A DNA stretch of 63,871 bases, filler included, from Octopus bimaculoides (Eukaryota), in assembly GCF_001194135.2 (NCBI RefSeq). It is 8 parts of 7 records of this genome, joined end to end, with 100 filler letters (N's around TTAATTAATTAA, not from the genome) between each part and the next. Parts side by side here need not be neighbours in the genome. Positions count along the whole stretch, not along the records: positions 25,836 to 40,601 come from NC_069000.1; 7 more parts are not named here. The stretch is one strand, 5' to 3'. This document shows, piece after piece, positions 25,853-40,601 of this stretch (its first letter is position 1; every line of letters begins with the position of its first letter). The notes under the pieces were generated by a model that had not been told where the DNA came from, made no database searches, and saw only the letters and a list, made by a program, of their open reading frames with translations. Position numbers and translations under genes: made by a program.

Positions 25853-26028
25853 GTTCTTTTCATTATTTGCATTATTTACATTCGACTGATATTTGTTCTC
25901 ATCTTGTTTGTTGTTAACACAACGTTTCGGCTGATATACCCTCCAGCCATCTTCAGGTGTCTTGCGGAAATTTCGAACCGGGGTTCTAATTCTTAAGGTA
26001 TTTTTCGATGTTGTTGTTGTTGTTGTTG

Positions 26029-26087
<59 letters not shown>

Positions 26088-26152
26088 GTTCAGGTCATTG
26101 CTTGGAATCGAACTCGGAATGTTGGGGTTAGTAGCCCGCGCTCTTAATCACT
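25853..26152 (-). mobile_element. tRNA-headed SINE carrying a hammerhead motif, family 1 copy a
   Basis: Head with B-box GTTCGATTCC, (AAT)n(AAC)n linker, body AACATCGAAAAATACCTTA..., hammerhead, tail AATAATGAAAAGAA into (TA)n. Confidence 0.75.
25916..25961 (-). ncRNA. minimal type I hammerhead ribozyme motif with intact core
   Basis: GACAC-CUGAAGA-U-GGCUG(GAGGGUAUAU)CAGCC-GAAACGU-U-GUGUU: stem I 5 bp, stem II 5 bp, palindromic ACGU stem III, GUU triplet. Confidence 0.75.
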
Positions 26153-26305: not shown

Positions 26306-26560
26306 ATGTGGAGGCGCGTGGCTTAGTGGTTAGGGTGTCAGCATCCTGATCATAAGATTGTGGTTTCGATTCCTGGACCGGCGACGCGTTGTGTTCTTGA
26401 GCAAAACACTTCATTTCATGTTGCTCCAGTCCACTCAGCTGGTAAAAATGAGTAACGCTGCGATGGACTGGCGTCCCGTCCAGCTGGGGAACACATACGC
26501 CATTGAAACCGGGAAACCGGGCCCATGAGCCTGGCTAGGCTTTAAAAAGGGCGAAAAAAA
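26306..26560 (+). mobile_element. tRNA-derived SINE
   Basis: A-box TGGCTTAGTGG, B-box GTTTCGATTCC, central GTGTTCTTGAGCAAAACACTT; head resembles the OR-like family. Confidence 0.75.
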
Positions 26561-26624
26561 AATTAAGGAGGGATAGAAAAATATTAGATTTATAAGCTCT
26601 AAAATTCACTCCCTAATTGCCCAC

Positions 26625-26846
26625 GGGCATATGGCGTAGTGGTTAAGAGCGCAGCCTACTAACCCCAAGATTCCGAGTCCAAGCTGTGAGAATAGCAACA
26701 ACATCGAAAAATACCTTAGGTATGAGAACCCAGGTTCGAAATTTCCCCAAAACACCTGATGAAGGCTGGAGGGTATATCAGCCAAAACATTGTGTTAACA
26801 ACAAACAAGATGAGGACAAATATCCGTCTAATGTAAATAATGAAAA

Positions 26847-26849
<3 letters not shown>
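26625..26849 (+). mobile_element. tRNA-headed SINE carrying a hammerhead motif, family 1 copy b
   Basis: A-box TGGCGTAGTGG at 26632; body and tail are the reverse complement of copy a. Confidence 0.75.
26751..26796 (+). ncRNA. hammerhead motif, probably inactivated
   Basis: AACAC-CUGAUGA-A-GGCUG...CAGCC-AAAACAU-U-GUGUU; G12 and G16.2 are both changed to A at CpG sites. Confidence 0.6.
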
Positions 26850-26885
<36 letters not shown>

Positions 26886-27632
26886 TTGTCTGTACGTCCC
26901 AGTATTGCATTTTTATGTGTGTGTATTTGTTGTACACAAGTGTAACTTTTTTATTCTCTTTCCTTCATGAATAGACAGCAATTATTTTCCCGTGTTGATA
27001 AAATTTTCTTTTCCTACACAATTTTATTTATATTGAGTTGGTACTTTTTCGATGTTTTTGTTGTTCTTTTTAAAATTTCGTAACCCACATGGATATTGAA
27101 TATCTATATATCTGTGAGAATGCGTACGTGCGCGTGTTTGCACAAGTGTGTGCATGTGAGTGAGTGTGTGTGGATGTGTGTTTGCATGTGTGTGGATGTG
27201 TGTGTTAGTGCGTGTATGTGCGTATTTGGAAGTTTGTGGGCGTGTTCAAGTATCTGTGTGTTATGTGTGTGTGTGTGTGAATGCGTGTGTGCGCGTATTT
27301 GTGAATATGTGTGCGTGTTTACGTATCTGTGGATGCATGTGTGTACGTGTGTGTGTGTGTGCGTGTGTATTTATGAGTATGTGTGTATGCGTGCACGTAT
27401 CTGTGTTTGTGTGTGTGTGTGTGTGTGTATGTGTGTATGTCCGTGTCATTACATAACTTTGTGATGAAAACAGAAGTTTATAAATATCGCGGTTTATTTA
27501 TAAATACCCAATTAACCGACGTTAGCAACTCATTTGTATCCCGCTTAATTACATTTTAATTATTGAAAATGAAAAAGATACATTCGATGGCCCTTGAGTT
27601 TGATGCAATTGATGTTGATTTTATTCTAAATA

Positions 27633-28016
27633 TTGTTGGCACTCCGTCGCTTACGACGACGAGGGTCCCAGTTGATCCGATCAACGGAACAGCCTGCTCG
27701 TGAAATTAACGTGTAAGTGGCTGAGCACTCCACAGACACGTGTACCCTTAACGTAGTTCTCGGGGACATTCAGCGTGACACGGTGTGACAAGTCTGGCCC
27801 TTTGAATTACAGGCACAACAGAAACAGGAAGTAAGAGTGAGAGAAAGTTGTGGTGAAAGAGTACAGCAGGGTTCGCCACCATCCCCTGCCGGAGCCTCGT
27901 GGAGCTTTTAGGTGTTTTCGCTCAATAAACACTTACAACGCCCGGTCTGGGAATCGAAACCGCGATCCTATGACCGCGAGTCCGCTGCCCTAACCACTGG
28001 GCCATTGCGCCTCCAC
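27633..28016 (-). mobile_element. full-length tRNA-derived SINE (OR-like family), copy 2
   Basis: Minus head GTGGAGGCGCAATGGCCCAGTGGTTAGGGCAGCGG...GTTTCGATTCCC; 3' hairpin CGTCGTAAGCGACGG. Confidence 0.85.
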
Positions 28017-28276
28017 TCTAAATATTGATAGATGCAGGAAACGGACAACGAGGTGGGAGAGGAATCTCCGAAGTACAAATATTCCGGAGAGGGTGAGCTG
28101 GCTGTAGAAGTGAATATGTGGTGTTGTTATTACTGGATACGCTACGCCTAGCAAACAGAGAAAAGACGTGTGAGTGTGGTGCACCTAAAATGGAGACCTA
28201 TCAGCTTTAAGGAGCATAGGCCAACGTTATAAAGTCAGAATACATAGAGTATCTGTGGGCAACAGATTAGGGTTTA

Positions 28277-28653
28277 AAGTAGTCGTATGCTGTCAACTTA
28301 ATGTGACAGTCCCCCGAAGGGAATAATACTACTGTTGGTTAGACCTAGGAAGCTGCACCGCTTCCTGTCGGCCTTGACACATTTCCTGTGTCCTTATGTT
28401 TACAAGGGGGAGACAAGCACCTCCACTCAGCTAGGCCCGCATCCAGAGACATATTTCTGAGTCTTTGCTCGTCATCAGTCTGGAGTAGCATGACCTGCTA
28501 GTCGAAGGACACAGGAAATGTGTCATAAGGACATAAGGACACAGGAAATGTGTCAAGGCCGACAGGAAGCGGTGCAGCTTCCTAGGTCTAACCAACAGTA
28601 GTATTATTCCCTTCAGGGGACTGTCACATTAAGTTGACAGCATACAACTACTT
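28277..28653. repeat. long near-perfect inverted repeat (arms 28277-28399 and 28531-28653) around a 131-bp spacer
   Basis: Arms of about 123 bp are reverse complements with very few mismatches; a 21-bp direct duplication lies at 28505 and 28535. Confidence 0.92.
28442..28484 (-). ncRNA. minimal type I hammerhead motif, family 3
   Basis: UCCAGA-CUGAUGA-C-GAG(CAAAGA)CUC-A-GAAA(UAUG)U-C-UCUGGA: stem I 6 bp, 1-bp stem III with tetraloop, GUC triplet. Confidence 0.65.
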
Positions 28654-28929
28654 CATCGTATCACTACTGCATAAATCTTTCTGAGAGATTTAGAAATGTA
28701 TTATTTCTAGATTAGGGTTTGTTGGAAATAACGGATATCTATTTTGAGATGCAGTCTGTCGTTTTACGGTGTTTAGTAGCAGCGCCTCCTCAGATGTGGC
28801 GGCACCAATTTAATTTCGGATTTCTCTTAATACCGCGAAGCATTTCGCCCGGCGTGCTAACGATTCTGCCAGCTCGCTGCCCTTAAGATTATAGATATTT
28901 CCACACCTAGGAACTCACGCATAGGAGGG

Positions 28930-29060
28930 TACGCTGTTTATCTTGATATGAGATCACCATGTCGCGCACATATGGCTGTGATGCATGCACCTGGTGTACT
29001 CTTATCAGACAGGTAGTCATGATGAGTATACTGAGCTTCGTATATTTCACTTTGATGGCA
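28930..29060 (+). repeat. dispersed repeat fragment; longer inverted copy at 38580-39010
   Basis: CTGTTTATCTTGATATGAGATC...GTGATGCATG...CTTATCAGAC...GTCATGATG is shared by both loci. Confidence 0.75.
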
Positions 29061-29139: not shown

Positions 29140-29331
29140 GAAAAGAAACATAACAAGTAACTGTAGAATATGTGGTGATGGACAAGAAACAATAAATCAT
29201 ATTATCTCTGGTTGCCCAGTCCTGGTTAAGAAGGAATATATTCACAGACACGACAGAGCTGGGACCTATATACACTGGAAGCTATGCCAACACTATGGAA
29301 TAACAACAGAAAAAAGATGGTATAAACACAC
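29140..29331 (+). mobile_element. 5'-truncated R4/Dong-clade retrotransposon (CCHC region) in a (TAA)n tract, running into a gap
   Basis: Open frame CRICGDGQETINHIISGCPVLVKKEYIHRHDRAGTYIHWKLCQHYGITTEKRWYKH; (AAT)n at 29079-29140 and 29695-29753. Confidence 0.85.
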
Positions 29332-29694
29332 NNNNNNNNNNNNNNNNNNNNNNNNNNNNNNNNNNNNNNNNNNNNNNNNNNNNNNNNNNNNNNNNNNNNN
29401 NNNNNNNNNNNNNNNNNNNNNNNNNNNNNNNNNNNNNNNNNNNNNNNNNNNNNNNNNNNNNNNNNNNNNNNNNNNNNNNNNNNNNNNNNNNNNNNNNNNN
29501 NNNNNNNNNNNNNNNNNNNNNNNNNNNNNNNNNNNNNNNNNNNNNNNNNNNNNNNNNNNNNNNNNNNNNNNNNNNNNNNNNNNNNNNNNNNNNNNNNNNN
29601 NNNNNNNNNNNNNNNNNNNNNNNNNNNNNNNNNNNNNNNNNNNNNNNNNNNNNNNNNNNNNNNNNNNNNNNNNNNNNNNNNNNNNNNNNNNNNN

Positions 29695-29754
<60 letters not shown>

Positions 29755-29870: not shown

Positions 29871-30841
29871 ATGATAATAATAATCTTTAACAACACAATA
29901 TTATACCATGATTGATTATTTTTATATGAGAATTGATTAAAAATAATTTGCGTGAGTTTTCCATCCTCGCAGCTAAAGAAACATATTCAAGTATATTCAC
30001 TCCGTTTCTTTATTTCGCTATTATCACAGTTTAAATGATTGTTATCATTCAAATCGACTTTTTTAAATGTGATTCTGTTGCTTCTCTCCCCGTTACAATA
30101 GAACAGTTTCGAGGTTTTTCGATCGAAAAATCTTGTAAAAGGAAGTAAAAACAAATAATTAAAGACACAAATTAAGTGGAAAAGAAAAACGCTTTCGCTG
30201 TTGTTGTGGTTAATGGTGGTGATTGTGGTGGTGGTGGTGGCAATGATGAAGATGTTGATGATGATGATGATGGTGGTGGTGATATTGATGGTGATAAGGA
30301 TGATGATGATGATGATTATGGTGATGGTATTGCTGATGGGGATAGTTATGATGAAGATGATAATGGTGACTATGACGACGACGACGATGATGATGACGAT
30401 GATCATGACGATTGTGTTGGTGATGATGATGATAAGTTTATGTCGATCATGTTCTTTTTGTTGTTGATGATGAAGATGATGAAGAGGCTGATGATGATAA
30501 CAAGTTGCTAATAATGATGATGATGGCGGTGGTCGTGATGATGCGACAGAGAAGAGAAAAGTAATAGAAAGCTGTCTACAAAAGATTTAGGAAAACAAAA
30601 GTGAAAAGAATTTGAAAGATGTTGTTTTTGAAGTTCAACTTCAAAGTCAACACTAATAAACGCTCATCAAAAACATTCTAACTGCGACCGTCTCTTATTC
30701 TTCAGTCATTGTGTATTATATTTTAAGACGGTAGGGGCATAATTTGAGGAAATTGTGATTACCATATCTAGCTGTTCGAGCAATTCACCCTGAGCCTTTC
30801 TCGTTGCTTGGAAATGAATATTTCGAATATGTTTAGTTTAA

Positions 30842-31063
30842 GCATTTCGTTACCAACTCGGCTGAAACCGGCCTTGGCTCTGTAGTACAAATGTCTTGTT
30901 TTCATAAGTTTTGAATTAAAATCTTTCACCAAACCTTAGTCACAATTTATGTTCCTAACACCAGCTTTATGTTAAATAAGTTATTTTACTTAATTCTTTG
31001 TTATATTTAACATTAATTGAAAGAGACACAGAGCATCCCAACAGAAATATGGTAACAAAAGGG
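30842..31063. mobile_element. piggyBac-type MITE, copy 1 of a tandem pair
   Basis: TTAA|GCATTTCGTTACC ... GGTAACAAAAGGG|TTAA. Confidence 0.8.
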
Positions 31064-31094
31064 TTAAAATATATAATAAAGGAACAATTCTTAA

Positions 31095-31314
31095 CCCATT
31101 TGATACCAACCCGGCTGAAACCACCTCTGGCTCTGAGTACAAATGTCTTGTTTTCATAAGTTCTGAATTAAAATCTTCCACCAAACCTTAGTCACAATTT
31201 ATGTTCCTAATACTAGCTTAATGATAACCAAGTTATTTTACTTAATTCGTTGTTATAGTTAAAGTAATTGAAAGAAACACAGAGCATGTAAAAATAAATA
31301 CAGTAACGAAAGGG
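31095..31314. mobile_element. piggyBac-type MITE, copy 2 of a tandem pair
   Basis: TTAA|CCCATTTGATACC ... AGTAACGAAAGGG|TTAA; internal sequence alignable with copy 1. Confidence 0.85.
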
Positions 31315-31863
31315 TTAAGGATTGCGATGATATCAACAACCATTCATTTTATGGGTTAATGTAATCGATTTAAGAGTTTAAATGCTTCTGAAGTTGACTT
31401 GGCCGTTTGTAATTACGGAGTCCAGAAAAAAAGTAGCAGGTGAGCACTGGGGTTAATGTAATCGGCTGACCCCCTCTTCTCAAAATTGCTGGCCTTTTGC
31501 CGCAAAACAAATTGAAGGAAAATCATTGTGATCGATTTAATTATTCAGTCTTGTGTTGATAACTGCATGATCAATCCATACCCTCTGGAATAAAGGCTAA
31601 AGGCAAGCGTGTCAGGTTTTGAGATTACAGTGCAAATATAGTTAATTAAATGTCTACCAAGATACTTTTCTTCACAACCTTGCTACCAAGATGGTGGACG
31701 GTCAAAATTTACTCGGAATTAAAAAGTGAAACAGAAGACATACACACATACATAGAGAATATACAAAGAGTTTTCGTCAACTGATGTAATGTGATATGTA
31801 TGTATTGTGTGCTCAGTTTGGTTTACCACTAAAACTCCAGCTTGAGACAATCACAGCCATACT

Positions 31864-31994
<131 letters not shown>

Positions 31995-32069
31995 ACACAC
32001 ACACACACATGTATGTATGTATGTATGTATGTATGTATGTATGTATGTATGTAGATATATGTATGTATG

Positions 32070-32480
32070 TATGTATGTATATCCTTATTCAGTTTTATTT
32101 CAAGATTTCTTGCCAATAGGGAAAGAGCCGGTTTCTAACCTAGATTCAAGGATCCTTCATTGGAATTTTAACATAAACACCAGGGTATGTATATGTGCAG
32201 ATTTGTATGTTTTGCTTTATGTATGTATTCTCATGCATATAGTTGCGTATCTACATATACTCATATATATTTAAATGATAAACTTATGGAACGTTTTACA
32301 GATTTTTTACAGTTCCACTGATGGATTAGATCTGTAATCTTTGAAATCAGCTTTCTCCTTTCTTGTTTTGAGAAGTCTAATTTCTCAAGATTAGAACTTA
32401 AGCAGTGTGTTATATATTCTAGTGCCCCAATAATTACAGGTATAAACCTGAACTTGTAATCTGGATAGAGTAACTGTAGA
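32070..32480. repeat. dispersed repeat abutting (TGTA)n; second copy at 56660-56990
   Basis: Shared TTTCTTGCCAATA...CCGGTTTCTAACC...TTTAAATGATAAA...TTACAGTTCCA.TGATGGATT.GATCTGTA; possibly a LINE 3' end on the minus strand. Confidence 0.7.
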
Positions 32481-32554
32481 TTCTTCAGTAGTTGAGCGTA
32501 TGTATGTATGTATGTATGTATGTATGTATGTATGTATGTATGTATGTATGTATG

Positions 32555-32720
32555 TATACGACGAGCTTCGCTCAGTTTCCGTTTACAAATTTCACTCCCA
32601 AGGCTGTGGTCATCCGGTGATTACAGTAGAAGACAAATGACCAAGGTGCCATGCAATGGAACCGAATCCGGATTCATGTGGTTATGAAGCAAGCTTCCTA
32701 CCAATTAGCCACGCTGCTAG
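32555..32720 (-). mobile_element. CORE-like SINE 5' half, diverged
   Basis: Reverse-complement similarity to 12817-12980. Confidence 0.65.
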
Positions 32721-33861
32721 TGACTTATTGAAAGTTTGTATTGGTCACTCATTGTCAGAATAATGCGTCTGAATAACAATTGTCTTTTATTTATACGATT
32801 TTGTGTAAGCGACTACAAATAAGGGAAAGAGAAATCCTACAAATTCAAAGAATGTTGATTAAGCGTTTAAAGGTGTGAATATCATTGATAAGAAGAATGC
32901 AAGACGATGATAATGAGTTCCGGAGAGCAGCAGTTTGAAGAAGGAAGATGTTAGGCNNNNNNNNNNAAACAAAACAAAAAAAACAAAACTAATAGGAAGC
33001 TGAACAGGGAAGCGAGTGCCTGGGAAGGGAGAGAAATATTAGCATTAATGGTAGTAAGATATAAATTAAACTTGGTTCCGGTAAGTTTTCAACCGTTTCA
33101 TAATGAAAGCATTGAATATTTTGTCAGTGAAAAAGAGGAGTGGAAATTTTGTTCTATTGAAAGTAAATTTCTGATGTACACTGATTCGAATTTCGAAGAC
33201 AGCTTTTAAAGTAGCTTCTGATACTTGTATTGGTATGGTATAGCAAATCTAAAATCACCTCATAAAAAAACAAAAACAAAAATGTGGATTGCAATTTAGT
33301 TCTTGGTTGACCTTTGCGGTAAGTTTCATTTCTCGTCGGAATGTAGTATTTCTCACGCTCAAAACTTTCATTTCATATAATTCATAGTCTTTTAGTTTGT
33401 CGTATACTGAGAGATAGAAACAACATTGTACTAACATGGGTTAATATACTTATAGTTGCCATTTACCGACATAGGTATATGAGCAAGTATACTAAAGACC
33501 ATATATTCATTGACCTATGTATGTATGTATATATGCATCTATATATGTACGTATCTATGTATCTGTATATACACACACACACATATAAAAGTAAATGTAC
33601 ACGTACATACACACACATATACAGATACACATACACAAACATACACACACACACATGTGTAGATTTATAAAGCAATATCCACAATAATCCACAATTTTTG
33701 AAAAATTTTAAAACGAAAAAAAGACACAAATGAAAGCATCGCAAAACGTATGACAAGTACTAAAATATGTCTTGATCTTCTGAATATTCTTCTGAATATT
33801 TTTTGAATATTTATTAATATATAAAATATGCACACCACAACAAAAAATCCATCTATCCATC

Positions 33862-34939: not shown

Positions 34940-34982
<43 letters not shown>

Positions 34983-35798
34983 NNNNNNNNNNNNNNNNNN
35001 NNNNNNNNNNNNNNNNNNNNNNNNNNNNNNNNNNNNNNNNNNNNNNNNNNNNNNNNNNNNNNNNNNNNNNNNNNNNNNNNNNNNNNNNNNNNNNNNNNNN
35101 NNNNNNNNNNNNNNNNNNNNNNNNNNNNNNNNNNNNNNNNNNNNNNNNNNNNNNNNNNNNNNNNNNNNNNNNNNNNNNNNNNNNNNNNNNNNNNNNNNNN
35201 NNNNNNNNNNNNNNNNNNNNNNNNNNNNNNNNNNNNNNNNNNNNNNNNNNNNNNNNNNNNNNNNNNNNNNNNNNNNNNNNNNNNNNNNNNNNNNNNNNNN
35301 NNNNNNNNNNNNNNNNNNNNNNNNNNNNNNNNNNNNNNNNNNNNNNNNNNNNNNNNNNNNNNNNNNNNNNNNNNNNNNNNNNNNNNNNNNNNNNNNNNNN
35401 NNNNNNNNNNNNNNNNNNNNNNNNNNNNNNNNNNNNNNNNNNNNNNNNNNNNNNNNNNNNNNNNNNNNNNNNNNNNNNNNNNNNNNNNNNNNNNNNNNNN
35501 NNNNNNNNNNNNNNNNNNNNNNNNNNNNNNNNNNNNNNNNNNNNNNNNNNNNNNNNNNNNNNNNNNNNNNNNNNNNNNNNNNNNNNNNNNNNNNNNNNNN
35601 NNNNNNNNNNNNNNNNNNNNNNNNNNNNNNNNNNNNNNNNNNNNNNNNNNNNNNNNNNNNNNNNNNNNNNNNNNNNNNNNNNNNNNNNNNNNNNNNNNNN
35701 NNNNNNNNNNNNNNNNNNNNNNNNNNNNNNNNNNNNNNNNNNNNNNNNNNNNNNNNNNNNNNNNNNNNNNNNNNNNNNATCCATCCATCCATCCATCC

Positions 35799-36517: not shown

Positions 36518-37292
36518 NNNNNNNNNNNNNNNNNNNNNNNNNNNNNNNNNNNNNNNNNNNNNNNNNNNNNNNNNNNNNNNNNNNNNNNNNNNNNNNNNNN
36601 NNNNNNNNNNNNNNNNNNNNNNNNNNNNNNNNNNNNNNNNNNNNNNNNNNNNNNNNNNNNNNNNNNNNNNNNNNNNNNNNNNNNNNNNNNNNNNNNNNNN
36701 NNNNNNNNNNNNNNNNNNNNNNNNNNNNNNNNNNNNNNNNNNNNNNNNNNNNNNNNNNNNNNNNNNNNNNNNNNNNNNNNNNNNNNNNNNNNNNNNNNNN
36801 NNNNNNNNNNNNNNNNNNNNNNNNNNNNNNNNNNNNNNNNNNNNNNNNNNNNNNNNNNNNNNNNNNNNNNNNNNNNNNNNNNNNNNNNNNNNNNNNNNNN
36901 NNNNNNNNNNNNNNNNNNNNNNNNNNNNNNNNNNNNNNNNNNNNNNNNNNNNNNNNNNNNNNNNNNNNNNNNNNNNNNNNNNNNNNNNNNNNNNNNNNNN
37001 NNNNNNNNNNNNNNNNNNNNNNNNNNNNNNNNNNNNNNNNNNNNNNNNNNNNNNNNNNNNNNNNNNNNNNNNNNNNNNNNNNNNNNNNNNNNNNNNNNNN
37101 NNNNNNNNNNNNNNNNNNNNNNNNNNNNNNNNNNNNNNNNNNNNNNNNNNNNNNNNNNNNNNNNNNNNNNNNNTCTCCTTCTTCGTTATTACAAAATGCT
37201 ACAGCCGTCATCATCGTTATCATCATATTTGCCATCTTCTTCATCACGACGACGACGAGGACCACCACCACCACCACCACAAACACCACCAG

Positions 37293-38299: not shown

Positions 38300-39246
38300 T
38301 ATATAAATAATTTAAAATAGGACGGTGCGCTGGCAGAATCGTTAGCACGCCGGGTGAACTTCTTTCTTTGTTGCCCACAAGAGGCCAACAAAGAGGGGAC
38401 AACACAAACACATGTGGGGACACATAGCACAAAATGATTAAAATGAAATTCAAATAAAACTATAATTATGATAATATGGATGAATAACGAGAATGAGAAA
38501 ATGGAAATGTACTGCTTGCCCCACCTCAAGCAGCATCACTCACTTCCTTTTATCTTGGGCTTCCCTTCAATATGAAGACCTCTATACCCATCATGACTGT
38601 CCGTCTGATAAGGGGACCCCAGGCACATGCATCACGGCCACATGTGCGTGACATAGGGATCTCATATCAAGATAAACAGCACATGACCTTGCCGATGGGG
38701 CCCAGTTAGAATTTTATTCAGGTCGAGTATCCCATCCCGTTCAAAGGACCCCTGAATAAGGGTTGTTTAAAGATAATCAACGAAACACCCATGAATTCCT
38801 CTCAACACATGGCTATGATGACTCGCCCCCCAACTACTTCTGCTCATGATCAGAGATGCACATATCGTCAGCCACTAAGGGACATGCTCAAACGGATAAG
38901 GTCGACAAGCAAATCTGTGGTATTGAGCAGAATATTTTCTGTAAGGCCATCTTTTATACCAAGACCAAATATGTAACTTCCAGTCAGTTAAGATCAGAAA
39001 CCATGACAACCACCTCCCGGTATTGCATCAGAGCATCTTACTACTACTACTGCATCATCATCATCATCATCATCATCAAGTACTACAACTTCATAGCATG
39101 TAATAGAAGTACTTTCTCATACTGATACGTCTAGATTACTATCATCATCATCATCATCATCGTCATCATCATCACCATCACCATCATCATCATCATCATC
39201 ACCACCACCGTCACCATCATCATCATCAGCAACCATCATCATCACC

Positions 39247-39277
<31 letters not shown>

Positions 39278-40250
39278 CCATCNNNNNNNNNNNNNNNNNN
39301 NNNNNNNNNNNNNNNNNNNNNNNNNNNNNNNNNNNNNNNNNNNNNNNNNNNNNNNNNNNNNNNNNNNNNNNNNNNNNNNNNNNNNNNNNNNNNNNNNNNN
39401 NNNNNNNNNNNNNNNNNNNNNNNNNNNNNNNNNNNNNNNNNNNNNNNNNNNNNNNNNNNNNNNNNNNNNNNNNNNNNNNNNNNNNNNNNNNNNNNNNNNN
39501 NNNNNNNNNNNNNNNNNNNNNNNNNNNNNNNNNNNNNNNNNNNNNNNNNNNNNNNNNNNNNNNNNNNNNNNNNNNNNNNNNNNNNNNNNNNNNNNNNNNN
39601 NNNNNNNNNNNNNNNNNNNNNNNNNNNNNNNNNNNNNNNNNNNNNNNNNNNNNNNNNNNNNNNNNNNNNNNNNNNNNNNNNNNNNNNNNNNNNNNNNNNN
39701 NNNNNNAAGGAAAGGAGACAAGCATCCTCAGCTGAATTTCCCTGTGTTGGCGTCAATTCATTTCTCTCTGTAAATACAAAATGGTTTATGTCGATCAATA
39801 TAAATCGAAGATAGATTGATAGATTTAATGAAATTAATAAAATCCCCAAAGGTAGCCATTTTATATTTCTTGTCCTTCCATCCGTATCTAATCATACAAT
39901 ATTCTTTGATGTCGTGTTATCGTTTGTGTCTGTTTAAATATTAATTTTCTAACATAGGTACCGCCGATTAAATTAGTCTCGACTGCTGGAACCCAAAAGA
40001 ATAAAAGAGTAAGTCGACCCGACGCGTTTCAAATTTGGAAAGTTAAAGGGCGGCAAGATATTTTCTCCAAAGTTCTGCTTATTCAGATTAATAACTATTT
40101 TCGTTTAAATATTTCTTAAATGTTTAAGTAGGATAAAAAAAGGTTGCCATTCCGTAATAAACCTTTCTACTATAGACACGAGGCTTGAAATTTGGGAGAC
40201 GGGGATAGTCGATTACATCAACCCCAGCAACCAGAGACATTCCGTAATAG

Positions 40251-40601
40251 TTGTTGGCACTCCGTCGCTTACGACGTCGAGAGTTCCAGTTGATCCGATC
40301 AACGGAACAGCCTGCTCGTGAAATTAACGTGCAAATGGCTGAGCACTCCACAGACACGTGTACCCTTAACGTAGTTCTCGGGGACATTCAGCGTGACACA
40401 GTGTGACAAGGCTGACCCTTTGAATTACAGGCACAACAGAAACAGGAAGTAAGATTGAGAGAAAGTTGTGGTGAAAGTGTACAGCAGGGTTCGCCACCAT
40501 CCCCTGCCGGAGCCTCGTGGAGCTTTTAGGTGTTTTCGCTTAATAAACACTCACAACGCCTGGTCTGGGAATCGAAACAGCGATCCTATGATCGCGAGTC
40601 C
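40251..40601 (-). mobile_element. tRNA-derived SINE (OR-like family), copy 3, head cut by a gap
   Basis: Closely similar to 27633-28016. Confidence 0.85.

What the first reader, a model, noticed from the sequence alone, without database searches (positions are those of the whole stretch)
28277..28653. Young 123-bp inverted repeat enclosing a third, unrelated hammerhead
Seen: near-perfect arms with no obvious TSD or recognisable DNA-transposon TIR. The spacer holds, on the minus strand, a 6-bp stem I, canonical CUGAUGA and GAAA, a 1-bp stem III with UAUG loop (AUAUGU is self-complementary with G-U pairs, one change from the palindrome ACAUGU) and a GUC triplet. A 21-bp duplication sits at the arm/spacer junction. 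Inference: an inverted Penelope terminal-repeat structure or a retrozyme-like element that would otherwise be mis-annotated as a MITE. An extra A before GAAA may impair activity.
Basis: partly seen in the sequence, partly recalled or inferred. Interest (0 to 1): 0.7.

Follow-up and report, generated by a model that had tools for sequence, protein, structure and literature searches.

The report
Inverted Penelope-type retroposon insert with hammerhead
This is most likely an ordinary, dead 433-bp retrotransposon insertion in an octopus-like genome: two truncated copies of the 3' end of a Penelope-type element joined head to head, one of which carries a slightly damaged minimal hammerhead ribozyme motif.

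Summary
The arms 28277-28399 and 28531-28653 are 123 nt long and 98% complementary. A 21-nt duplication sits at the inner junction. On the minus strand, 28484->28442, lies a hammerhead-like motif: a 6-bp helix I, CUGAUGA, a 3-bp helix II, GAAA, a UAUG loop and GUC. A motif this good is expected about 0.005 times per piece by chance.

It bounds a 433-bp insert in which the inverted repeat sits off centre, 1 nt from the left copy and 55 nt from the right copy.

That layout matches published Penelope-like element (PLE) insertions. Those have two 5'-truncated copies head to head with their 3' ends outward, a tail on one end only, a palindrome at the inverted junction and a short target-site duplication. 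The hammerhead lies in sense in the longer copy. It has the PLE hallmark of an unpaired base after A9, but also an extra A before G12 and a short helix II, so it is probably weak or dead.

Retrozyme and MITE readings fail their defining tests. No RT/GIY-YIG ORF and no other copy could be reached, so PLE membership is inferred from architecture alone. New member of a known kind; modest interest.

The parts
28264..28275 (.). Left copy of the 12-nt direct repeat AGATTAGGGTTT, the putative target-site duplication
   Evidence: only 2 matches in the window, 0.11 expected by chance; a shared substring of >=12 nt in the 80-nt flanks occurs in 2 of 5000 shuffles.
28276..28276 (-). Single A (T in element sense) between the duplication and the arm; possibly an untemplated base at the 3' junction
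28277..28399 (-). Left arm: the 3'-terminal 123 nt of the longer copy (sense = minus strand), with its 3' end at 28277
   Evidence: It holds four local palindromes (CTGTCA..TGACAG, CCC..GGG, GGAAGC..GCTTCC, GACACA..TGTGTC), read.
28400..28504 (-). Unique 105 nt upstream of the arm in the longer copy, ending at its 5'-truncation point (about 28504)
   Evidence: It runs on directly from the left arm, whereas the break with slippage repeats lies next to the right arm. The boundary is inferred.
28442..28484 (-). Minimal type-I hammerhead-like motif. Helix I is 28484-28479 paired with 28447-28442. CUGAUGA is 28478-28472. The unpaired C is 28471. Helix II is GAG 28470-28468 paired with CUC 28461-28459, with loop CAAAGA. 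The extra A is 28458. GAAA is 28457-28454. The loop UAUG is 28453-28450, U16.1 is 28449 and C17 is 28448.
   Evidence: Helix I and helix II both appear in the centroid folds.
28505..28530 (+). Junction filler: a second copy of the 21-mer AAGGACACAGGAAATGTGTCA plus TAAGG, giving ATAAGGAC twice. It contains the palindrome GACACA-GGAAA-TGTGTC.
   Evidence: (D1, I2). Reading it as a template switch or microhomology join is inferred.
28531..28653 (+). Right arm: the shorter, more heavily 5'-truncated inverted copy of the same 123-nt 3' end (sense = plus strand), with its 3' end at 28653
28654..28708 (+). 55-nt extension ('tail') present only on the right copy; it folds into two small hairpins
   Evidence: Compare the 30-40-bp tail found at one end of PLE inserts (PMC8557442, PMC3846280, PMC11167929).
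28709..28720 (.). Right copy of the 12-nt direct repeat AGATTAGGGTTT

Best explanation
The 433 bp from 28276 to 28708 are one retrotransposition insert made by Penelope-like-element (PLE) machinery in an octopus-like genome.

Two cDNA copies of the same RNA 3' end were primed from the two strands of a staggered target cut, which left the 12-bp duplication AGATTAGGGTTT. Both copies have their 3' ends facing outward. The longer copy (minus sense, 28504->28277) keeps the last 228 nt of the element, including a minimal hammerhead about 165 nt from the 3' end. The shorter copy (plus sense, 28531-28653) keeps only the last 123 nt, but started 55 nt further downstream on the template and so carries a tail. 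The two 5' ends were joined at a short palindrome with 26 nt of templated filler.

The insert was dead on arrival: it has no ORF and only a single ribozyme copy. In the parent element the hammerhead would act as a dimer on tandem or longer-than-unit transcripts. Here it is a passenger, and it is probably weak or inactive because it has an extra A between C11.1 and G12, a 3-bp helix II and no partner copy. If this locus is transcribed, the RNA would fold mainly into a 123-bp hairpin.

Shown: the repeat anatomy, the duplication, the motif and their statistics. Inferred: the PLE machinery, priming on both strands, and the state of the ribozyme's activity.
For: Anatomy.

Target-site duplication: 12 nt, found only twice in the window, p about 4e-4 to 2e-3. 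One copy abuts the arm to within 1 nt.

Arms: both end outward at the same base, and their only two differences are CpG->TpG changes. The arms were therefore identical when formed.

Motif: about 0.005-0.007 expected per piece by chance. By my own multiplication, it falls in the 3.5% of the piece occupied by the insert, and on the strand that the geometry independently makes the sense strand of the longer copy, which brings the chance figure to about 1e-4.

Literature match:
- 'An inverted 5'-truncated copy immediately adjacent', with a 30-40-bp tail often at one end only (PMC8557442).
- A PLE protein cleaves and extends both strands, and two RT start sites define the tail (PMC11167929).

The same piece holds a bona fide min-HHR of this type in an inverted pair of SINE-like copies that end in (TA)n. 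Elements carrying such ribozymes have therefore inserted elsewhere in this genome.
Against: - No RT or GIY-YIG coding remnant in the piece.
- No protein homologue of the insert's ORFs, including the sense ORF that starts just upstream of the ribozyme.
- No second copy of the family was reachable in any collection, so neither conservation of the hammerhead nor fixed termini could be tested.
- The tail is 55 nt, against the usual 30-40.
- Helix II is 3 bp, against 6-8 in published min-HHRs.
- The extra A between C11.1 and G12 is not part of any published consensus that I read.
- The hammerhead region is no more stable than shuffled sequence (z 0.6 and 0.18).
- There is no Rfam hit, although the in-piece control is missed as well.
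Confidence: 0.6

Rival explanations
1. The insert is a retroposon of some other kind, for example a LINE-mobilised SINE or a processed transcript that acquired an inverted duplication by template switching or self-priming during reverse transcription. The hammerhead-like motif is a chance match or a long-dead relic with no link to PLEs.
For: The 12-bp duplication and the lack of terminal inverted repeats at the insert's ends fit any target-primed insertion. No PLE ORF is present. The ribozyme core deviates at the 11.1/12 junction, and helix II is short.
Against: LINE twin priming inverts different segments of the template; it does not duplicate the same 3' end on both sides. There is no poly(A) or microsatellite tail. 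A one-sided tail and a junction palindrome are PLE signatures. The chance expectation for the motif is about 0.005 per piece, and it lies in sense orientation.
Confidence: 0.17
2. It is a MITE or foldback DNA transposon with 123-bp terminal inverted repeats, moved by a transposase.
For: Long, near-perfect inverted arms around a short spacer, and a small overall size.
Against: No duplication directly flanks the ends of the arms: the adjacent bases are AGGGTTTA on the left and CATCGTAT on the right. The only significant direct repeat lies 1 nt from one arm and 55 nt from the other. The ends of the 433-bp unit are not inverted copies of each other: AAAGTAGTCG against the reverse complement AGAAATAATA.
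Confidence: 0.08
3. It is a local inverted duplication produced by replication fork switching or repair at the GACACA..TGTGTC palindrome. It is not a mobile element, and both the flanking 12-mer and the hammerhead motif are coincidences.
For: There is a palindrome and slippage repeats at the inner junction. No other copy lies in the 14.7-kb piece.
Against: It requires two independent coincidences, at about 4e-4 to 2e-3 and about 0.005. It also does not explain why the left arm starts 1 nt from the direct repeat.
Confidence: 0.08
4. It is a functional hairpin-RNA locus, selected for its 123-bp stem as a source of endo-siRNA or as an ADAR substrate.
For: The predicted RNA hairpin has dG -288.5 kcal/mol and z = -32.8. 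I recall, but did not check here, that cephalopods edit double-stranded RNA heavily.
Against: Any young inverted duplication folds this way. There is no evidence of transcription, conservation or compensatory change. The two arm differences both turn a G-C pair into a G.U wobble, and as CpG decay they are more simply read as neutral.
Confidence: 0.04

Closest known systems
Penelope-like element insertions with inverted pseudo-LTRs (Arkhipova et al. 2013, PMC3846280; Craig et al. 2021, PMC8557442)
   Same: Head-to-head 5'-truncated copies with 3' ends outward. A short target-site duplication (8-10 bp reported, 12 bp here). An extension or 'tail' on the 3' end of only one inverted copy. A palindrome at the inverted junction. 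No poly(A). A hammerhead within the repeat, in sense orientation.
   Different: No RT/GIY-YIG ORF or direct pLTR pair is present. Only 228 nt and 123 nt of the element survive. The tail is 55 nt rather than about 30-40. The family's full-length parent is unknown.
Metazoan PLE minimal hammerheads, 'min-HHR' (Cervera & De la Pena 2014, PMC4209133)
   Same: Type-I order of elements, CUGAUGA and GAAA boxes, an unpaired nucleotide between A9 and G10.1, helix III reduced to one pair with a self-complementary loop (which implies action as a dimer), and a GUC cleavage triplet.
   Different: An extra A separates C11.1 from G12. Helix II is 3 bp, not 6-8. Helix I is 6 bp, not 4-5. The loop is self-complementary only if G.U pairs are allowed.
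The min-HHR-bearing tRNA-headed SINE-like pair in the same piece (25853-26150 minus strand; 26627-26850 plus strand)
   Same: An inverted pair of copies with 3' ends outward, each carrying a minimal hammerhead in sense orientation.
   Different: No sequence similarity to the finding outside the core boxes. These copies are full length with tRNA-like heads, lie about 480 bp apart, are 89% alike, and were inserted in (TA)n. Their helix II is 5 bp with a clean G10.1-C11.1 pair next to GAAA.
Non-LTR retrozymes of animals (Cervera & de la Pena 2020, PMC7229834)
   Same: A small non-coding retroelement with a type-I hammerhead and a duplication longer than 4 bp.
   Different: Retrozymes are head-to-tail tandem repeats, each with a hammerhead, so that a monomer can be cut out and circularised. 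Here there is one hammerhead and an inverted arrangement, not a direct one.

Membership tests
Metazoan PLE min-HHR (PMC4209133) | Catalytic boxes CUGANGA and GAAA in type-I order, with a UH cleavage site | tested here: met
   CUGAUGA 28478-28472, GAAA 28457-28454, GUC 28450-28448.
Metazoan PLE min-HHR (PMC4209133) | [quoted passage not shown] | tested here: met
   C28471 lies between A9 and the first G of helix II. The feature is described.
Metazoan PLE min-HHR (PMC4209133) | G10.1-C11.1 pair closing helix II directly next to G12 | tested here: inconclusive
   G28470 and C28459 can pair, but A28458 sits between C11.1 and G12. Read the other way, positions 10.1/11.1 would be a C.A mismatch.
Metazoan PLE min-HHR (PMC4209133) | Palindromic positions 15.2-16.2 and loop 3, allowing a dimeric helix III | tested here: inconclusive
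   AUAUGU is self-complementary only with two G.U pairs. It is one change away from the perfect palindrome ACAUGU (read from the sequence).
Metazoan PLE min-HHR (PMC4209133) | Longer than usual helix II (6-8 bp) | tested here: not met
   Helix II is 3 bp, GAG/CUC, with a 6-nt loop.
Metazoan PLE min-HHR (PMC4209133) | Many copies per genome that form consensus families with covariation | not testable with these tools
   No eukaryotic genome could be searched. There were no hits in metagenome or viral contigs or in the protein collections.
Metazoan PLE min-HHR (PMC4209133) | Self-cleavage, at least as a dimer | not testable with these tools
   This needs an in vitro transcription and cleavage assay.
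Penelope-like element insertion | ORF encoding an RT plus a GIY-YIG endonuclease | tested here: not met
   The piece has no ORF of 90 aa or more that is not low-complexity. Ten stop-to-stop fragments chosen by length and composition gave no Pfam family. This is expected for a heavily 5'-truncated or non-autonomous copy, so it limits the claim without contradicting it.
Penelope-like element insertion | An inverted 5'-truncated copy adjoining the main copy, with 3' ends outward | tested here: met
   Both arms end outward at the same nucleotide. The inner ends differ by 105 nt of unique sequence. That the outward ends are 3' ends is inferred.
Penelope-like element insertion | A short extension ('tail') on one end only | tested here: met
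   55 nt (28654-28708) lie between the right arm and the duplication, against 1 nt on the left. This is longer than the 30-40 bp reported.
Penelope-like element insertion | A short target-site duplication flanking the whole composite insert | tested here: met
   12 of 12 nt are identical; p about 4e-4.
Penelope-like element insertion | A palindrome at the inverted junction | tested here: met
   GACACA-GGAAA-TGTGTC occurs at 28508-28524 and 28538-28554, with its complement at 28376-28392 (I2 and D1).
Non-LTR retrozyme | Two or more head-to-tail repeats, each with a hammerhead | tested here: not met
   There are no tandem direct repeats of the unit. My descriptor finds one hammerhead in the insert and no other of this family in the piece.
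MITE / TIR DNA transposon | Terminal inverted repeats at the very ends, directly flanked by a duplication | tested here: not met
   There is no duplication at the arm tips. The 12-nt repeat is asymmetric, and the ends of the unit are not inverted copies of each other.
Rfam hammerhead families (types I, II, III, HH9, HH10) | A score above threshold against the covariance model | tested here: not met
   No hammerhead hit at E<=1 on the piece or at E<=10 on 161 nt. The models also miss the clean min-HHR at 25961-25916, so the test has no power for this class.

The most novel reading that the evidence does not exclude
The insert represents an undescribed non-autonomous family in octopus that depends on PLE machinery. 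In this reading the hammerhead tolerates an inserted nucleotide between C11.1 and G12 and still cleaves as a dimer. The head-to-head insertion products would then be a regular source of long perfect hairpin RNAs, which could act as siRNA precursors or ADAR substrates in a lineage known for heavy RNA editing.
Probability: 0.08. Interest if true: 0.55.

Novelty: new member of a known kind. Interest (0 to 1): 0.3.

Why it matters
Automated pipelines would label an element like this as a MITE or leave it unclassified. Recognising the signature (inverted 3' ends, a one-sided tail, an offset duplication) assigns it to PLE-type retrotransposition, and adds a cephalopod example of a minimal hammerhead carried in such inserts.

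The junction also bears on the proposal that PLE proteins prime on both strands of the target. It preserves two copies of the same 3' end, two different start points, and templated filler at a palindrome.

Beyond that it is a single dead copy, and nothing suggests a function for the host.

Tried and rejected
- Rfam scans of the piece and of the spacer found no hammerhead. A control scan on the in-piece min-HHR also found nothing, so I treated the Rfam result as uninformative.
- tRNA scan: none found.
- Searches for other copies all came back empty:
  - exact look-ups of three window ORFs;
  - protein search with the 54-aa ORF spanning arm and hammerhead;
  - protein search with the sense ORF that starts 7 nt upstream of helix I, which tested the idea that the ribozyme overlaps the start of a PLE ORF, as in the anole element;
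  - two metagenome scans, one with the ribozyme core and one with an arm 22-mer;
  - one viral-contig scan;
  - a look-up of the single octopus protein hit.
- BLAST of the unit against the piece found only itself.
- A paralogous 'empty site' in the piece: the flanking repeats do not reach the insertion point.
- Pfam on ten selected stop-to-stop fragments found nothing real.
- Thermodynamic support for the hammerhead fold: none. One script crashed and was rerun; the rerun's hammerhead substring was 2 nt out of register, so its numbers for that substring (including the constrained monomer-fold energy) are not used.
- The retrozyme, MITE, Helitron (considered from the sequence only) and twin-priming LINE readings were considered and rejected on anatomy.

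Full report
**1. The observation**

The arms 28277-28399 and 28531-28653 are 123 nt long, 98% complementary and 131 nt apart. The 21-mer AAGGACACAGGAAATGTGTCA occurs at 28505-28525 and again at 28535-28555. Both copies are perfectly complementary to 28375-28395 in the left arm.

The minus strand reads UCCAGA-CUGAUGA-C-GAG-CAAAGA-CUC-A-GAAA-UAUG-UC-UCUGGA from 28484 down to 28442. This has the order of parts of a type-I hammerhead:
- a 6-bp helix I;
- both catalytic boxes;
- a 3-bp helix II;
- helix III reduced to the A15.1-U16.1 pair around UAUG;
- a GUC triplet, which puts the cut between C28448 and U28447.

**2. Is the motif chance?**

I wrote a simple descriptor: CUGANGA, 6-40 nt, GAAA, 2-40 nt, UH, with the flanks forming helix I. 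On the 12.5 kb of non-N sequence it finds two motifs with helix I >=4 bp: this one and one at 25961-25916.

In 1500 order-1 Markov simulations of the piece, the expected numbers over both strands were:

| Criterion | Expected per piece |
|---|---|
| Helix I >=6 bp | 0.032 |
| Helix I >=6 bp and helix II >=3 bp, allowing one unpaired base on each side | 0.005 |
| As above, with helix III spacing also <=8 nt | 0.0007 |

The relaxed criterion was shaped with this candidate in view, so these figures are somewhat generous to it. Chance alone is still a poor explanation.

The fold gives no extra support. The 59-nt and 100-nt stretches around the motif are no more stable than shuffles (z = 0.60 and 0.18), although helices I and II appear in the centroid structures.

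Rfam reports no hammerhead on the piece at E<=1, nor on 161 nt at E<=10. The same test also misses the well-formed minimal hammerhead at 25961-25916. Rfam therefore has no power for this class.

**3.

AGATTAGGGTTT occurs exactly twice in the window, at 28264-28275 and 28709-28720. A shared 12-mer between the two 80-nt flanks of the inverted repeat arises in 2 of 5000 shuffles, and in 1 of 600 equivalent window pairs drawn from the piece.

The left copy ends 1 nt before the left arm. The right copy begins 55 nt after the right arm. The inserted unit is therefore 28276-28708, 433 bp, with the inverted repeat placed off centre inside it. The ends of this unit are not inverted copies of each other, and no duplication flanks the arm tips themselves. 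This rules out a MITE-type reading if the 12-mer is a target-site duplication.

**4. Anatomy of the insert**

Both arms end outward at the same nucleotide (...GCATACGACTACTT in sense). They differ at only two positions, and both differences are CpG in the left arm against TpG in the right arm. The left arm has 4 CpG and the right arm 2. The arms were therefore identical when made and have since undergone ordinary CpG decay. This also argues against an assembly artefact.

The 105 nt at 28400-28504 run on directly from the left arm. The discontinuity lies next to the right arm instead. There, 26 nt (28505-28530) repeat the start of the right arm, giving the 21-mer twice and ATAAGGAC twice. This stretch contains the palindrome GACACA-GGAAA-TGTGTC.

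I read the whole structure as follows:
- a longer copy in minus sense, 28504->28277 (228 nt);
- a shorter copy in plus sense, 28531-28653 (123 nt), followed by a 55-nt tail at 28654-28708;
- the two 5' ends joined through templated filler at a palindrome.

The hammerhead lies on the minus strand, which is the sense strand of the longer copy. The geometry did not force this outcome; the motif could equally have fallen on the other strand.

**5. Comparison with the literature**

This is the published architecture of Penelope-like element insertions:
- Arkhipova et al. 2013 describe inserts bounded by inverted pLTRs with 8-10-bp duplications. [quoted passage not shown]
- Craig et al. [quoted passage not shown]
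- A purified anole PLE protein cleaves and extends both target strands. It starts reverse transcription at two internal sites, and the interval between them is the tail (PMC11167929).
- Cervera and De la Pena 2014 found minimal hammerheads in PLE repeats, and widely as solitary or opposite-strand pairs 100-700 bp apart. [quoted passage not shown]

The candidate has the unpaired nucleotide (C28471) and a loop that is self-complementary with G.U pairs. It departs from the consensus in three ways: a 3-bp helix II, a 6-bp helix I, and an extra A (28458) between C11.1 and G12. I found no published variant with that insertion. From general knowledge of the core, where G12 pairs with A9 and acts in catalysis, I expect the insertion to weaken or abolish cleavage. 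That is an inference.

**6. Context in the piece**

A SINE ORF next to the insert matches an uncharacterised Octopus bimaculoides protein (82% identity, E = 1.7e-15). The source is therefore an octopus or a close relative. Penelope elements are annotated in the giant squid genome, which also carries hammerhead type-I hits (PMC6962438); remnants of Naiad-type PLEs are reported in cephalopods including Octopus spp. (PMC8557442).

About 2.3 kb upstream there is an independent example of the same theme. Two tRNA-headed SINE-like copies lie in inverted orientation, each ending at (TA)n with its 3' end outward, and each carrying a minimal hammerhead in sense. The left one is clean: CUGAAGA-U-GGCUG...CAGCC-GAAA-CG-UU. 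They share no sequence with the present insert beyond the core boxes, so 'unrelated' is fair.

**7. What could not be shown**

The piece holds no RT or GIY-YIG remnant. The insert's ORFs have no homologue, including the sense ORF that starts 7 nt upstream of helix I. I tested that ORF because in the anole element the ORF start overlaps the ribozyme.

No other copy of the family was reachable by exact look-ups, by metagenome or viral scans, or through the one octopus protein. No paralogous empty site exists in the piece.

Membership of the PLE world therefore rests on architecture plus the ribozyme motif. It does not rest on homology or on family-level conservation.

**8. Mechanism and rivals**

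The most likely account (about 0.6) has the following steps:
1. A PLE protein made a staggered cut at AGATTAGGGTTT.
2. It primed cDNA synthesis on both strands from the 3' region of the same RNA species, once from the internal start site and once from the downstream one.
3. Both cDNAs were truncated.
4. Their ends were joined at a palindrome.

The result is a dead composite. Its RNA, if ever made, would fold into a 123-bp hairpin (dG -288.5 kcal/mol, z -32.8) with the hammerhead in the apical loop.

The rivals are:

| Rival | Confidence |
|---|---|
| A non-PLE retroposon with an RT-generated inverted duplication and a fortuitous or relic motif | about 0.17 |
| A long-TIR MITE or foldback element | about 0.08 |
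| A local inverted duplication with two coincidences | about 0.08 |
| A selected hairpin-RNA locus | about 0.04 |

The retrozyme reading fails outright, because there is no tandem direct repeat and only one ribozyme.

**9. Verdict**

This is a new member of a known kind. Interest is modest. Its main values are as an annotation lesson and as a tidy natural record of a PLE-type insertion primed on both strands.

Noticed in passing
window 25853-26150 (minus sense) and 26627-26850 (plus sense): An inverted pair of tRNA-headed SINE-like copies. The 160-nt cores are 89% alike. Each abuts (TA)n with its 3' end outward, and each carries a minimal hammerhead in sense. The left one (25961-25916, minus strand) is CUGAAGA-U-GGCUG..CAGCC-GAAA-CG-UU with helix I GACAC/GUGUU, a clean PLE-type min-HHR. 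The right one (about 26751-26796, plus strand) has G12 changed to A. The left copy has a (GTT)n(ATT)n expansion inside it. A SINE with a PLE-type ribozyme and a (TA)n target would be worth a genome-wide look.
   Followed up: partly
window 27633-28016 (minus sense) and 40251-40601 (cut by the piece's edge): Two copies, 96% alike, of a tRNA-derived SINE of about 385 bp whose head lies at about 28016-27940. ARAGORN calls no tRNA there. An ORF within it matches Octopus bimaculoides protein A0A0L8H1P9 (82% identity), which places the source among octopuses.
   Followed up: partly
window 26308-26565 (+): A third, different tRNA-headed SINE with an A-rich end (GGGCGAAAAAAAAA). It lies between the two inverted hammerhead-bearing copies.
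   Followed up: no
window 30838-31318: A tandem duplication of about 252 bp (two units, 78-92% alike across three aligned blocks). Its nature is unknown.
   Followed up: no
window 28844-28873 and 28933-29030 against 38329-38358 and 38583-38680: Fragments of another dispersed repeat lie just right of the insert. They match inverted fragments 10 kb away (86-97% identity) but are not collinear with them. They stop short of the insertion site, so they give no empty-site control.
   Followed up: partly
window 27329-27399, 31957-32111, 32491-32568, 33507-33666: Rfam 'microRNA' matches (mir-3149, mir-297, mir-1277 and others; E down to 6e-10, all far below the gathering scores) are (CA)n/(ATGT)n microsatellites and not genes.
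   Followed up: yes
window 29226-29700, 34970-35780, 36520-37180, 39280-39700 (approximate): Runs of N (2249 in the piece) are assembly gaps, mostly next to microsatellites. Long ORFs listed across them are artefacts.
   Followed up: no
window 28654-28708: The 55-nt tail folds into two adjacent 6-bp hairpins (AGAAAU..AUUUCU and AAAUCU..AGAUUU in the minus-strand fold). It also repeats the arm-end motif ACTACT. This may be relevant to where reverse transcription starts.
   Followed up: no
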